A DNA stretch of 62,131 bases from Stylophora pistillata (Eukaryota): positions 1 to 62,131 of the forward strand of contig NW_019218439.1 in assembly GCF_002571385.2 (NCBI RefSeq). Direction: 5' to 3'. The position numbers and the translations under genes were made by a program. Of the stretch, positions 13,916-50,600 are shown piece after piece (within the stretch, counting starts at the first letter, position 1; each line of letters opens with the position of its first letter). A model generated the notes under the pieces. That model searched no databases. It worked only from the letters and a program-made list of their open reading frames with translations, and was not told where the DNA came from.

Positions 13916-14015
13916 ATGGAGCTATTTCTTCGGTCTAGGCAATTTCTCGTTGAGTTTTTTCAGCTTGCAATTGTCTTTCTTGTCATAAAAGGCTGCGCAT
14001 TTGAATACCTTAAAG
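13916..14015 (+). CDS. Paralog 2 exon 1: signal peptide
   Basis: gaaATGG context; MELFLRSRQFLVEFFQLAIVFLVIKGCAFEYLK; strong phase-1 donor G/gtaaga matching the first MAM exon. Confidence 0.7.
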
Positions 14016-14995
14016 GTAAGATAAGTTAGAATAACTCTTGCTCCCTTAAAGTGATTCATTTTTAGGCTTATTTGCTATACTTCTGTTTTTATCCATTTCT
14101 CTTTGATAACTCAGTATGTCTGGTTTTGGAACTTTCGCACAAACATGAACGGTCTCACACATTCTTTGTATTTTTCCCAAACCTACCGTAAAAAAAAAAA
14201 TGTATTCCCCCTGTTGTTTTAAACGACCAAGTTGATGAATTTTCGAGATAGTTTATACTTGGGATAATTTGAAGTCAGCTTAAACAAACAAAGGAAAGAG
14301 CCATCCATTTCCTTTTAGAATATCGAGAGTTTCTAACCTTTCCACTTCAAAAATGCAATATGAAAAACAAACTTAATTTTCTTAGATCTCACTTTTTGTC
14401 ACTTCGACTTCAAAGACTTATAGAAATTATCTTCAACGGTGATTATTGCAATACAAAGTTATTAAAAATTCTAAAAGCAGCAGATATTTTAGAACGATCT
14501 TGTTTTAAGACAAGACCAGCTGTCTTCGGTGTCTCAAAGTTCATTTGACCCTCCTCTTTTACCACAAACTCTTGGGGAAATAAGTTACGATGTAAACAAG
14601 ATGTAGCGACATACACTGATCATGAAACGTGCTCGTTTGTCTTCTAGTCATTTAATTTTTTTGGACTTTTAAAAGAAAATGAAGAGCCTCATTTTTCAAA
14701 ACTGTTGGTTGGGATGAATTGCGTGTTAATGATTCTATGATTCTTTTTGGAAACGTTAAATCCAGAATTATTTTCTAAATCCAGGGTCTCTTTCTTCATT
14801 CAAGGAAAGTGTACCTTCGATGAGAACACATTCTGTAGCTGGTATAACGAGAGATACACTGATCATTTTGATTGGTCCCTTTGTCAAGGAAGTTCTCCCA
14901 ACAATCGAACAGGTATAGAGATAAGTTTTTCATTGAACTAATTTATTCTTGTTTTTCTCGTTACCACGTTACCACCAATGGCGTAGCTCCACTTT

Positions 14996-47600: not shown

Positions 47601-50600
47601 TCAAAACCAATGAGCTTGTGTCTTGCAATCTGTCTAAGAATGCCCATCAAGCTGCAGATGTGAAGAGTTTGGTGGAGAAATAGACAAGAGGATCCTGGTG
47701 AGAGGAGAAGATTTACTGAGTGTACCGAATGATCTTCCAACAAACGTCGGAGCAGTGTATGTAACATTTGGGGTTCTTTAACCCTCACTTTTCGTTTTAT
47801 CATCTTCTCTTTTCCAAAAATAAAATTAACAGTTCCTTCCTCGTGTTTCTCCAAGTAACCGATATTCTTGCTACTTGTTTAAAAAGGTTTTTTGGCCAAA
47901 ACCGGATCTCCCAATTACGCGAGGAGGACTTTGCAAACCTCTTGAAATTGGAATATATGTAAGTAAACATGTAACATTTTTTTTTTTGAGATTGGACAAT
48001 ACTTTGTTGCAGAGACTGTATGAATATTGAAAATTTTTCGATCAGTAATCAAGATAGTGGCTAAGACAACCATATGATTTCCTTAAACAACGCCTTGACT
48101 AACAGTTTTCGGGCGAAAGGAGCTTTCGTTGTCTCTGTACTTTCTGGACAAAGACGAAAAAAAAATTTCTCTTTTTAAAACTCAATCCCTTTGATCTGAG
48201 CTTAAAGCTGTTGTGTCACTGTTTTGAAAAAAGTTGTCAATTCTTTCTTTCTCTTCGTCAGTGATGTGAGCTTCAACACCCTGCTTCACGTGGATGAGGA
48301 CAGCTTTCAAAATTTGACATTCGTTAAGACACTGTAAGCATTAAGTAGTTATTATTTTCAAAGTGACTGAGTAACTTTTCCGCCCTCGATTCTAGAGAAA
48401 CGTCGATGATCACGTGGATACACAAAATACATTTTATAACAATCGATATATTCACTTATTTGTCGCAGGAGACTTAATTTTAAGTTTCTTCGAGCTCTTC
48501 CTGTTGGGGCCCTCAAAGGATTATCCAATTTACGTGTACTGTGAGTATTTCGTGTAAATAATGTCATTCTCGTACTTCTTATGCGTTCTTTACAAGACAC
48601 AAATGTGTTCAGATCGAAAAAAACATTTTCGAGAGAGAATACGGGTAAGGGAGAATTAAGTTATCTACCTCTTTTTAAGTGAATAAAAGGGATTGACTAC
48701 TTTCTTTCAGTGACTTAGGAAGGAACCTTCTTCGGGTTGTATTCAGCGAGATGCTCGATGGACTTTCGAATTTGGAAATTTTGTATGTACTCATTTTTAG
48801 ACCAATTAGTTTTTGTTGTTATATTATAGTTATAAGTCTATAATAATCAGCCAAATCATATTTTCTCTTGGTTTTGTTACAGGAGTCTTCGCTCTAACCA
48901 AATCGAGCGGTTGGAATATGGTGCTTTTAGGAATAAAAGCAACATGACTCATTTGTAAGTACATTTGAGTGGTTCTCAGGTCACTCAGATCAGACTTAGA
49001 CGCTCAGTTTTCAATAAAGCCAATACAAACTGATTTTAAATTTGATCGAAAAAGCTTAATGCGATCAATGCAATATATGATTGGCTATTAGAGTGCTGGT
49101 CTTAAGCTAAGTCAGCAGAAACATCTTGCTCTTTTGTTTGTTTGTTTCATTCTTGTTTCTTTGTAGGTACCTACAAGATAACAAGCTCAAAGAAGTATCA
49201 AATGGGATGTTCAAAGATCTTCTTAAACTTAAACTTTTGTGAGTGCATTTTAATGTCATACTTAGAGTCCAAAACCTGAGAGTTAATTTGTGCATTTGTC
49301 ATTAATTTTTTTTTCTAATTTGTTGCTGTCGTGGTCTTTAGTATTTGTGTTGTTATCTTTGTTGTAAGCGCTGGTAAAACACTTGCTTCTTTTTAATTAT
49401 TCTTATCTTACCAACTTACAACTCACCAGAAATCTCAGCACAAACAGACTGAGGACTGTTTCTAAGGAAACTTTTCAAGGGTTGCAGTCGCTTGAGTATC
49501 TGTAAGTGTTTGACTTTGCTGAGCAAAAGTGAATTACTTACTTACCTACTTAGGGTTTGCACTTTGCTGTAAGACGTTGTTAGCATTTGATCAGTCAGTT
49601 AATGATTTTCTTTCGAAGAACTGTGAATTCGAAATTTAAAGCTTATTTGAAAGGAAAATGCCCCTAGTCGTATTTTTAAGGATTTATTGCAGTTGATGAA
49701 TACTTTCTTGAAACGATTTTTAAACTCAATCATTAAAAAAGGTCGAGGATAAAATTATTTGGGAAAAAGAATTGATTTGATCAAAAGTAGAAATGAACAA
49801 ATTCGCTTTTGAATGGATAAATAATAGCCTAAGTCAGTTTGATAGAAATGTCATATGCATCAGTAAATTTGGTAATGGACAGGGTGGAAAGTGTTCTTCT
49901 TGACTTTTTTCGTTCATAAATTCAGGTACCTGGATAAAAACGAACTTACCCTGAAAGTACCCCCAGATGCGTTCAATGACCTCAAGAACCTGCGATATTT
50001 GTGAGTCATTTGTTTAACAATCCTCGTCAGTCTAAATTGCTTGCAATTGGTTTTGTCCAGGACATCGATGTGGAATAATGACAGGAATTAAAGCAAAGTT
50101 TCCCTCTTTACAATTCTAACAGGAAACTGGATCACTTCATACTATGTTGCTACGCCAAGAAGTCAATTGGAGGAGTGGATTGCGAATCCCCAGTCAATGA
50201 ATTCTCAAGTTGCGATGACCTCATGAAAAATAAAACTCTCCAAACTTGCATCTGGATTCTGGGAATCCTTGCTTTCTTTGGTAATCTGCTTGTCATACTA
50301 TGGCGGATAGTTGATACAGAAGAGAACAGGGTCCACTCGTTCTTGCTGAAAAATCTAGCGCTTGCCGACATGTTCATGGGTGTTTATCTGTTGGCAATTG
50401 CAATTATGGACGCAAGGTGGCAAGGAGAATATTTTAAGCACGACCATGAATGGAGGTCTGGTTGGGGTTGTCGAATAATTGGAGTTCTCTCGATGCTGTC
50501 CAGTGAGGTATCTGTACTAATTCTAACAATCATCACAATGGACAGATTCATTTGCATCGTCTTCCCGTTCAAATTCCGTCGCCTGACGTACAAATCCGCC

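What the first reader, a model, noticed from the sequence alone, without database searches (positions are those of the whole stretch)
13916..50000. Giant (~3,900 aa) mosaic ectodomain packed with many lectin-type folds on a single LGR
Seen: about 63 phase-compatible exons join 7 MAM, 2 C-type lectin, LamG, 2 WSC, F-type lectin, PA14, 3 LDLa, 5 F5/8, pentraxin and CUB domains in front of the LRRs, with no stop or second signal peptide. Established: CTLD, WSC, FTP, PA14, discoidin and pentraxin folds frequently bind glycans, whereas GRL101/RXFP ectodomains are normally only LDLa + LRR. Inference: an adhesion-GPCR-sized class A receptor (no GAIN/GPS seen) acting as a multi-glycan pattern-recognition or adhesion sensor. 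With LRRs outside and a kinase fold inside, it loosely parallels plant lectin/LRR receptor-like kinases. It is a candidate for microbe/symbiont, gamete or settlement-cue sensing.
Basis: partly seen in the sequence, partly recalled or inferred. Interest (0 to 1): 0.85.

Follow-up and report, generated by a model that had tools for sequence, protein, structure and literature searches.

The report
Giant mosaic-ectodomain coral LGR receptor gene
The stretch is one real, expressed coral (Stylophora pistillata) gene for a 4,535-residue relaxin-receptor/GRL101-type G-protein-coupled receptor carrying about 30 adhesion and lectin-type domains. It is already predicted in RefSeq and has relatives across sea anemones and corals, but its function has never been studied.

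Summary
RefSeq protein XP_022806567.1 (Stylophora pistillata LOC111343650 isoform X1, 4,535 aa) threads at 100% identity onto the window as 70 coding exons, 13916-54172.

Pfam confirms 7 MAM, 2 C-type lectin, LamG, 2 WSC, 5 F5/8C plus one FTP-like domain, LDLa, pentraxin, CUB, LRRs and a rhodopsin-type 7TM. PA14 is supported only through homologues.

RNA contigs from three studies and raw stranded reads show every splice joint from the CUB exon through the LRRs and 7TM into the tail. The N-terminal two thirds rest on gene models and on collinear homologues in Nematostella, Actinia, Oculina and Montipora.

The 7TM is closest to RXFP1 and GRL101-like receptors. No GAIN/GPS was found. The cytoplasmic "kinase" lacks both catalytic aspartates in every anthozoan homologue aligned, so it is a pseudokinase.

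Glycan or pattern sensing is plausible but untested. Only one C-type lectin domain keeps the EPN/WND sugar motif, and the FTP-like domain lacks the fucose-binding motif.

The gene is already in databases and the family is uncharacterised. I rate it a striking variant of a known receptor kind, of moderate interest.

The parts
13916..14015 (+). Exon 1: start codon and signal-peptide-like N-terminus (hydrophobic residues 10-32), followed by the first MAM
   Evidence: Threading of P0191; N-terminal sequence; hydropathy scan
14805..19515 (+). Exons 2-10: three MAM domains, each a three-exon cassette
   Evidence: Pfam MAM hits on 15647-16030, 17172-17474 and 18796-19092; exon table
20346..20735 (+). 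Exon 11: unassigned module of about 130 aa. Weakly similar stretches follow the first MAM in four homologues.
   Evidence: No Pfam hit; matches in homologues: four of ten for the 515-644 module alone; nine listed for 485-644, which includes the MAM3 end; protein-atlas search and single-sequence AlphaFold uninformative
21161..21592 (+). Exon 12: C-type lectin domain 1, with EPN (residue 744) and WND (residue 771) motifs
   Evidence: Pfam Lectin_C 1.3e-12; motifs
21912..22538 (+). Exon 13: Laminin_G_3 / concanavalin-like domain
   Evidence: Pfam 1.7e-9
22775..25668 (+). Exons 14 and 15: two WSC domains, separated by the largest intron (2,300 nt), which holds a reverse-transcriptase ORF on the minus strand
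   Evidence: Pfam WSC; RVT_1 on 23213-24580 minus strand; intron statistics
25907..26314 (+). Exon 16: C-type lectin domain 2, without EPN/QPD or WND motifs
   Evidence: Pfam Lectin_C 1.9e-14; sequence
27176..27754 (+). Exons 17-18: FTP-like / F5_F8_type_C_2 galactose-binding-like domain; the fucose-binding His/Arg motif was not found
   Evidence: Pfam PF22633 1.4e-8; motif search
28234..30403 (+). Exons 19-24: PA14-like region (residues 1466-1758)
   Evidence: No Pfam hit here; aligns with stretches of Oculina P0158 and Acropora P0161 that contain their PF07691 hits
30904..31722 (+). Exons 25-27: MAM4
   Evidence: Pfam MAM 4.8e-11
32401..33277 (+). Exons 28-30: two canonical LDLa modules, a degenerate third (exon 29, skipped in isoform X2) and a linker
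   Evidence: Pfam Ldl_recept_a 8e-22; sequences; X2 difference
33799..36654 (+). Exons 31-36: MAM5 and MAM6
   Evidence: Pfam MAM
37078..43635 (+). Exons 37-46: five tandem F5/8 type C (discoidin) domains, two exons each
   Evidence: Pfam F5_F8_type_C, 1e-13 to 3e-18
43978..45594 (+). Exons 47-50: pentraxin / LamG-type domain with the signature HVCVSW
   Evidence: Pfam Pentaxin 5e-14 and Laminin_G_3 on P0191; signature
45743..46287 (+). Exons 51-52: MAM7; the match starts at profile position 46
   Evidence: Pfam MAM 4.7e-13
46710..47054 (+). Exon 53: CUB domain
   Evidence: Pfam CUB 2.7e-22; RNA contigs join it to the following exons
47213..50000 (+). Exons 54-63: linker, LRR N-cap and leucine-rich repeats. 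Seven exons are 72 nt, and the nine introns from exon 55 to the 7TM exon are all phase 2.
   Evidence: Pfam LRR_8 x5; every joint seen in RNA
50123..51168 (+). Exon 64: cysteine-rich hinge plus the whole rhodopsin-type 7TM (DRF, CCWMP and NPILY motifs)
   Evidence: Pfam 7tm_1 2.9e-35; nearest solved structure RXFP1, 2.3e-56; sequence
51590..54175 (+). Exons 65-70 and stop codon: cytoplasmic pseudokinase tail ending in -SFV. It lies outside the finding's coordinates but belongs to the same gene.
   Evidence: Pfam PK_Tyr_Ser-Thr, partial; PDB alignment to OSR1 and Lck; alignment of tails; spliced RNA contig L001

Best explanation
Window 13916-54175 (+) is a single, transcribed gene of the coral Stylophora pistillata. 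It is RefSeq LOC111343650, and GenBank PFX15365.1 calls it 'G-protein coupled receptor GRL101'. It encodes a type C (relaxin-receptor/GRL101-like) leucine-rich-repeat GPCR.

The usual LDLa+LRR ectodomain has been enlarged to about 3,900 aa of extracellular modules. Most of the domain-boundary introns are phase 1. In order the protein reads: signal peptide, 3 MAM, an unassigned module, CTLD, LamG, 2 WSC, CTLD, FTP-like, PA14-like, MAM, 3 LDLa, 2 MAM, 5 discoidin, pentraxin, MAM, CUB, LRRs, hinge/7TM, and a catalytically dead kinase-like tail with a C-terminal S/T-x-V/L motif.

Shown here: the gene structure, domain content, expression, LGR type C affinity, pseudokinase status and family conservation.

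Inferred: the receptor sits in the plasma membrane. Its long ectodomain captures multivalent extracellular partners, either glycans through CTLD1, WSC, discoidin and pentraxin, or proteins and matrix through MAM, CUB and LDLa. This changes the LRR/hinge-7TM conformation to signal through G proteins, with the pseudokinase and the possible PDZ-binding motif acting as a scaffold. My odds are about 0.9 for the structural part and about 0.35 for the glycan/adhesion-sensor mechanism.
For: - Exact threading of XP_022806567.1 as 70 exons, 63 of them before the 7TM exon.
- Pfam on single exons and on the whole database protein.
- All 13 splice joints between exons 53 and 66 appear in poly(A) RNA contigs from three studies. 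All 13 but two also appear in stranded raw reads whose first mates lie on the minus strand, as expected for a + strand RNA. One 5,637-nt contig carries 3.7 kb more sequence upstream of the CUB exon.
- A Logan RNA contig joins exons 66-70 and runs 375 nt past the stop.
- Collinear domain order holds in homologues of Nematostella, Actinia, Oculina and Montipora. The 7TM is 57-81% identical and the ectodomain modules 25-67%.
- Introns are short (median 338 nt, maximum 2,300 nt), and there is no internal hydrophobic segment.
- By 7TM bit score the order is RXFP1, then TSHR, then LGR4. GRL101-like proteins of Ptychodera, Patiria, Antedon and Oratosquilla are 47-49% identical.
- CTLD1 has EPN+WND, the pentraxin signature is present and two LDLa acidic clusters are intact.
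Against: - RNA was laid only on 46.7-52.7 kb (one call allowed). The joints of exons 1-52 rest on two public gene models and on homology, not on reads seen here.
- The upstream 3.7 kb of the long RNA contig was not shown to me.
- RefSeq isoform X3 (3,655 aa) ends in intron 54 and would be a secreted ectodomain without LRR/7TM. An internal 3' end is therefore predicted, though not verified here.
- The two closest orthologue models (Oculina P0162, Porites P0165) lack the N-terminal 1,750-1,900 aa. They start inside or just ahead of a MAM domain without a signal peptide, so they look truncated.
- No ligand, localisation or signalling data exist.
- The LDLa modules lie about 1,600 aa from the LRRs, unlike in RXFP1, so an RXFP-like tethered-agonist mechanism cannot simply be assumed.
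Confidence: 0.8

Rival explanations
1. It is a peptide-hormone receptor like other type C LGRs. An insulin/relaxin-like peptide binds the LRRs and LDLa modules. The huge mosaic is accessory, for example anchoring to matrix or co-receptors, or tuning, and is not a pattern-recognition device.
For: The 7TM is closest to RXFP1 and GRL101-like receptors. An LRR block of about nine repeats, a type C-like cysteine hinge and two intact LDLa modules are present. The literature proposes insulin-like ligands for GRL101/type C2 LGRs (PMC8286064, PMC4079206).
Against: The LDLa modules are separated from the LRRs by about 1,600 aa and ten domains. The family is strongly expanded in this genome, with at least 32 intact 7TM exons, which fits diversified sensing better than a few hormone axes. 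No ligand is known for any GRL101.
Confidence: 0.3
2. It is mainly an adhesion or matrix protein, or a shed/secreted scavenger. The 7TM serves chiefly as a membrane anchor, and isoform X3 gives a soluble form.
For: MAM, CUB, discoidin, LamG and pentraxin are typical adhesion/matrix modules. RefSeq predicts a 3,655-aa isoform that ends before the LRRs. One RNA contig uses a donor 4 nt upstream in exon 67, which truncates the tail.
Against: The 7TM keeps the DRF, CCWMP and NPILY motifs and is the most conserved part (57-81% identity). The tail is conserved as well. The joint 47251>47639 that bypasses the X3 stop was seen in all four runs.
Confidence: 0.15
3. The single-gene model is an annotation artefact that fuses a secreted multi-lectin gene with a shorter LGR gene.
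For: The closest orthologue models start at MAM4 or LDLa.
Against: - Those orthologue models begin inside or just ahead of a MAM domain without a signal peptide, so they are truncated.
- The full collinear order occurs in independent models from Nematostella, Actinia, Oculina and Montipora; Acropora keeps the order but lacks several modules.
- Introns 24 and 27 are 500 and 678 nt. Their only ATG-led ORFs reach just 19-45 aa, and none has a convincing signal peptide.
- There is no internal hydrophobic segment.
- All exon phases fit.
Confidence: 0.05

Closest known systems
GRL101 / type C2 LGRs (Lymnaea GRL101; GRL101-like proteins of echinoderms, hemichordates and crustaceans)
   Same: The rhodopsin 7TM is 47-49% identical to proteins named GRL101-like. 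LRR block, cysteine hinge and LDLa modules are shared, and GenBank gives the same automatic name. The Ptychodera GRL101-like protein also carries a kinase-like tail.
   Different: Canonical GRL101 has only LDLa repeats plus LRRs and is about 1,100-1,400 aa. Here about 30 further domains are added, and the LDLa modules lie far from the LRRs.
RXFP1/RXFP2 (type C1 LGRs; structure 7TMW)
   Same: Best solved-structure match of the 7TM exon (2.3e-56). Both combine LDLa, LRRs and a 7TM.
   Different: RXFP1 has one LDLa tethered by a short linker to the LRRs (PMC4837482). It has no MAM, lectin, discoidin, CUB or pentraxin modules and no kinase-like tail.
Predicted anthozoan homologues: Nematostella LOC5517652 (3,306 aa), Actinia LOC116297509, Oculina LOC144641914 and LOC144655983, and others
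   Same: Same family. The domain order is collinear and the same pseudokinase tail is present.
   Different: The Stylophora protein is the longest anthozoan homologue retrieved. Against the homologues compared, it has three N-terminal MAMs where the four complete N-terminal models aligned (Nematostella P0152, Actinia P0157, Oculina P0158, Acropora P0161) appear to have one (not counted directly); a LamG module with no match in any of the ten homologues; WSC x2 between the CTLDs (WSC occurs elsewhere in Nematostella P0168 and Montipora P0169); and five discoidin domains, several of which the Oculina orthologue also has. All are unstudied predictions. A review notes only that Nvec-LGR4 has extra CUB and FN2 domains (PMC9545775); I could not link Nvec-LGR4 to this family.
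Adhesion GPCRs (for example ADGRG6 with CUB and pentraxin, latrophilins with a lectin domain, ADGRV1). Recalled from general knowledge, not tested here.
   Same: Comparable size and a mosaic of adhesion/lectin modules in front of a 7TM, with a likely analogous role in sensing contact or matrix.
   Different: Those are class B2 receptors (7tm_2) with a GAIN/GPS autoproteolysis domain. Here Pfam gives 7tm_1 and no GPS/GAIN.
Polycystin-1 and MAM/LDLa proteins (MALRD1, MAMDC4). Recalled from general knowledge, not tested here.
   Same: Giant ectodomains that combine LRR, WSC, C-type lectin and LDLa (polycystin-1), or alternating MAM and LDLa modules.
   Different: They have different membrane parts (11-TM channel-associated or single-pass) and are not LGRs.

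Membership tests
LGR type C (RXFP/GRL101-type class A GPCR) | Rhodopsin-family 7TM most similar to relaxin-receptor/GRL101 receptors | tested here: met
   Pfam 7tm_1 2.9e-35. PDB phmmer: RXFP1 2.3e-56, TSHR 1.5e-40, LGR4 8.6e-19. GRL101-like proteins are 47-49% identical.
LGR type C (RXFP/GRL101-type class A GPCR) | Leucine-rich-repeat block with N-cap and cysteine-rich hinge directly before TM1 | tested here: met
   Pfam LRR_8 x5. Exons 55-63: seven are 72 nt and their nine following introns are all phase 2. Hinge and 7TM share one exon.
LGR type C (RXFP/GRL101-type class A GPCR) | LDLa module(s) in the ectodomain | tested here: met
   Ldl_recept_a 8e-22 on exon 28. Two modules keep the acidic cluster and the third is degenerate. 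They lie about 1,600 aa from the LRRs, not next to them.
LGR type C (RXFP/GRL101-type class A GPCR) | Activation by a relaxin/insulin-like peptide | not testable with these tools
   No ligand data; this needs receptor expression assays.
Adhesion GPCR (class B2) | GAIN/GPS domain and a secretin-like 7tm_2 | tested here: not met
   Whole-protein Pfam at E<=0.01 lists neither GPS/GAIN nor 7tm_2; the 7TM is 7tm_1.
Active protein kinase / receptor kinase | Catalytic Asp of HRD and Mg-binding Asp of DFG | tested here: not met
   HRD reads HNN and DFG reads LGG. All seven anthozoan tails aligned also lack both aspartates (catalytic motif HNN, HNA or HNS; LGG, or LAG in Acropora). The stretch between the catalytic loop and subdomain XI is about 45 aa shorter than in OSR1.
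Ca-dependent carbohydrate-binding C-type lectin | EPN or QPD motif plus WND motif | tested here: inconclusive
   CTLD1 has EPN (residue 744) and WND (residue 771). CTLD2 has neither. Binding itself was not tested.
F-type (fucose-binding) lectin | His plus two Arg motif (H..R.D....R/K) | tested here: not met
   The pattern H.{20,30}R.D.{4}[RK] is absent from the protein. The domain matches PF22633 only.
Pentraxin | Pentraxin signature HxCx(S/T)W | tested here: met
   HVCVSW at residue 3283; Pfam Pentaxin 5.2e-14 over profile positions 27-193.
PA14 domain | Match to PF07691 | tested here: inconclusive
   No hit in P0191 at E<=0.01. Residues 1471-1741 align with stretches of Oculina P0158 (34% identical) and Acropora P0161 (33% and 31.5%) that contain PF07691 hits, or a GLEYA hit for the second Acropora stretch.

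The most novel reading that the evidence does not exclude
Anthozoans, and perhaps hemichordates, may keep an ancient and so far undescribed receptor class. In it a GRL101-type 7TM is coupled on the outside to a giant multi-lectin/adhesion ectodomain. On the inside it carries a conserved pseudokinase with a possible PDZ-binding end. This would work as a pattern-recognition or contact-sensing GPCR in coral-microbe, coral-symbiont or settlement biology.
Probability: 0.2. Interest if true: 0.8.

Novelty: new variant of a known kind. Interest (0 to 1): 0.5.

Why it matters
Class A GPCRs are normally compact. A 4,535-aa LGR with about 30 extracellular modules and a conserved pseudokinase shows that class A receptors took an adhesion-GPCR-like route independently.

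The family is expanded in corals: at least 32 intact LGR-type 7TM exons were found in this genome. If the ectodomain reads glycans or surfaces, these genes are candidates for symbiont or microbe recognition and for larval settlement cues.

The Nematostella homologue LOC5517652, in a species I recall is open to gene editing, would make this testable. The kinase-like tail shared with hemichordate GRL101-like proteins raises the question of an old LGR-pseudokinase fusion.

Tried and rejected
- Earlier findings by place and by words: nothing on the ectodomain. Only the sister note s1-777768 on the 7TM-kinase part turned up.
- Protein atlas on the exon 11 module: no hit scored 0.9 or more and no family emerged.
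- Single-sequence AlphaFold of the exon 11 module: pLDDT 40.6, unusable, so no fold search was run.
- Rfam on the very deeply covered 60-nt element in intron 54: no family.
- The look-up of encoding contigs with P0191: not on record.
- Literature: no paper holds the locus or accession numbers. The supplement files of the S. pistillata cell-atlas paper that are held as text do not list the protein. No paper found describes giant mosaic LGRs with a kinase-like tail.
- Rejected: adhesion GPCR (no GAIN/GPS, and the 7TM is 7tm_1); active receptor kinase (catalytic aspartates absent); pseudogene (intact 13.6-kb ORF, expressed, conserved).
Exons were searched one by one by reference. Whole-protein searches used the database protein P0191, which one search shows is identical to the spliced translation.
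- Not done: a phylogeny of the 7TM exons, and dN/dS against paralogues.
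Full report
WHAT IS THERE

The window is AT-rich animal DNA. Stop-free + strand pieces between 14 and 51 kb were scanned against Pfam one by one, by reference. They gave:
- MAM, many copies.
- Two C-type lectin domains.
- Laminin_G_3.
- Two WSC domains.
- An F5_F8_type_C_2 domain.
- LDLa.
- Five F5/8 type C domains.
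- A weak pentaxin match.
- CUB.
- A complete rhodopsin-type 7TM in one exon (50082-51173).
- A kinase fragment at 52.8 kb.

IDENTITY OF THE GENE

A HMMER search with the 7TM exon found many long predicted proteins with the 7TM near the C-terminus. Among them is Nematostella LOC5517652, whose architecture is very similar.

A second search found the protein 'G-protein coupled receptor GRL101 [Stylophora pistillata]' (PFX15365.1, 4,160 aa). Most of its exons map onto the window at 95-100% identity. The window is therefore Stylophora pistillata.

The same cluster holds the RefSeq models of LOC111343650: X1 with 4,535 aa, X2 with 4,497 aa and X3 with 3,655 aa.

EXON MODEL

A script threaded X1 (P0191) onto the window. 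It requires exact codon matches, GT or GC donors and AG acceptors. The result:
- The protein fits at 100% as 70 coding exons, from the ATG at 13916 to 54172, followed by TGA.
- 68 introns are GT-AG and one is GC-AG.
- Exons 1-63 run from 13916 to 50000 and encode 3,880 aa.
- Of the first 53 introns, 36 are phase 1, the usual mark of shuffled extracellular modules.
- The nine introns of the LRR part are all phase 2, and seven of its exons are 72 nt.
- Hinge and 7TM share one exon.
- Introns are short: median 338 nt, maximum 2,300 nt. The largest holds a reverse-transcriptase ORF on the other strand.

Whole-protein searches used the database protein P0191.

DOMAIN CONTENT

Pfam on P0191 gives MAM x7, F5/8C x6 stretches (five discoidins plus the FTP-like domain), Lectin_C x2, Laminin_G_3 x2, WSC x2, LDLa x2, CUB, Pentaxin, LRR_8 x5, 7tm_1 and a partial tyrosine/serine-threonine kinase match. 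GPS, GAIN and 7tm_2 are absent.

Further points on single domains:
- The third LDLa (exon 29) is degenerate and is the exon skipped in isoform X2.
- PA14 is not detected directly. Residues 1471-1741 align with stretches of the Oculina and Acropora homologues that contain their PF07691 hits.
- Exon 11 encodes a module of about 130 aa with only weak (24-29% identical) matches in four of ten homologues. Neither the protein atlas nor a single-sequence AlphaFold model could assign it.
- A hydropathy scan finds only the N-terminal signal-like segment and the 7TM block.

ONE GENE OR SEVERAL?

I could lay reads once, on 46701-52700. Poly(A) RNA contigs from three different studies show all 13 joints of exons 53 to 66 at the model's coordinates. 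Eleven of the 13 also appear in stranded raw reads from a fourth study. That covers the path from CUB through the linker and all LRR exons into the 7TM exon and on to the first two tail exons.

The raw reads have their first mate on the minus strand, as expected for a + strand RNA. One contig of 5,637 nt carries 3.7 kb more sequence upstream of the CUB exon. That length would reach MAM6, but I did not see that part.

A separate Logan contig joins exons 66-70 and continues 375 nt past the stop.

For exons 1-52 the evidence is indirect:
- Two independent public models include them.
- The same order of modules recurs in homologues of Nematostella, Actinia, Oculina and Montipora, with Acropora lacking several modules.
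- The introns are too short to hold a second promoter region.
- No convincing signal-peptide exon lies in introns 23, 24 or 27.

The two closest orthologue models (Oculina P0162, Porites P0165) start only at LDLa or MAM4. Both begin inside or just ahead of a MAM domain without a signal peptide, so they are truncated models, not shorter genes.

RefSeq X3 ends in intron 54 and would be a secreted form. I could not verify it. The joint that bypasses it was seen in all four runs.

WHAT KIND OF RECEPTOR

- The 7TM exon matches RXFP1 best among solved structures (2.3e-56). TSHR, LHCGR and FSHR follow, and then LGR4.
- Proteins named GRL101-like in hemichordates, echinoderms and a crustacean are 47-49% identical.
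- The DRF, CCWMP and NPILY motifs are intact.
- It is therefore a type C, GRL101-like LGR and not an adhesion GPCR.
- The genome holds at least 32 full-length, stop-free 7TM exons of this kind.
- One is a tandem paralogue whose 3' end opens the window: its 7TM lies at 971-2134 and is 82% identical, followed by matching tail exons.

THE TAIL

The 306 residues after TM7 align with protein kinases at the catalytic-loop region and at subdomain XI. HRD reads HNN and DFG reads LGG. The stretch between these blocks is about 45 aa shorter than in OSR1.

All seven anthozoan homologues aligned likewise lack both aspartates (HNN, HNA or HNS; LGG, or LAG in Acropora). They also share a C-terminal S/T-x-V/L ending. 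It is thus a conserved pseudokinase. Kinase-like tails also occur in a Ptychodera GRL101-like protein and in a giant Saccoglossus LGR. This agrees with the sister note s1-777768.

FUNCTION

Nothing is known experimentally. Features that favour ligand binding by the mosaic:
- CTLD1 keeps EPN and WND.
- The pentraxin signature HVCVSW is present.
- Two LDLa modules keep their acidic clusters.

Features against a purely lectin reading:
- CTLD2 and the FTP-like domain lack canonical sugar-binding residues.
- MAM, CUB and LDLa are mostly protein-binding modules.

My best reading is a surface receptor that captures multivalent extracellular partners and signals through the LGR 7TM, with the pseudokinase as a scaffold. 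I put this at about 0.35. A hormone receptor with an accessory mosaic is at about 0.3.

NOVELTY

The gene model is public, and comparable giant mosaic LGRs are predicted in many marine invertebrates. The searchable literature describes GRL101 as LDLa plus LRR. It notes only that one Nematostella type C LGR has extra CUB and FN2 domains (PMC9545775, PMC4079206, PMC8286064). I found no description of this architecture or of the kinase-like tail. I therefore rate it a new variant of a known kind, of moderate interest.

Noticed in passing
window 1-5055 (+): This is the 3' end of a tandem paralogue. It has LRR exons at 28-135 and a single-exon 7TM at 971-2134 that is 82% identical to the 7TM of the gene studied. 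Matching pseudokinase-tail exons lie at 2410-5061. The two genes lie head to tail, about 8.9 kb apart.
   Followed up: partly
window 7843-7965 and 8469-8558 (+): Isolated LRR N-cap/LRR-like pieces, 61% and 43% identical to exons 55-56 of the gene. They lie in the intergenic stretch just after the assembly gap 7184-7771 and are probably remnants of a partial duplication.
   Followed up: partly
window 23213-24580 (-): A 456-aa open frame with a reverse-transcriptase domain (RVT_1, 5.5e-30) lies inside the largest intron (intron 14), between the two WSC exons.
   Followed up: partly
window 47500-47559 (+), intron 54: A 60-nt element flanked by the direct repeat AACTTGCAAA has RNA depth in the thousands in all four runs. 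In other transcripts it continues with a conserved sequence. It looks like a truncated copy of an abundant transcribed repeat. Rfam has no match.
   Followed up: partly
window 52757/52761 (+), exon 67 donor; L001: The Logan RNA contig L001 uses a GT donor 4 nt upstream of the RefSeq donor. This shifts the frame and stops after ...ALQGKT, removing the C-terminal half of the pseudokinase. It may be an alternative splice form; its share was not measured.
   Followed up: partly
window 47252-47638 (+), intron 54: RefSeq isoform X3 (3,655 aa) is identical to X1 for 3,648 aa, up to the end of exon 54, and then ends after 7 more residues. It would be a secreted ectodomain without LRRs and 7TM. The deeply covered repeat in the same intron might have misled the prediction.
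   Followed up: partly
whole genome G000: There are 72 matches to the 7TM exon at E<=1e-20. At least 32 are full-length and stop-free single exons, which indicates a large expansion of LGR-type receptors in this coral. The closest further paralogue is at C799:108142-109179 (79% identical).
   Followed up: partly
P0011 (Ptychodera flava GRL101-like) and P0176 (Saccoglossus): Hemichordate LGRs also carry a kinase-like stretch after the 7TM (Pkinase 5e-5; PK_Tyr_Ser-Thr 2.6e-6). The LGR-pseudokinase fusion may therefore predate the split between cnidarians and bilaterians.
   Followed up: partly
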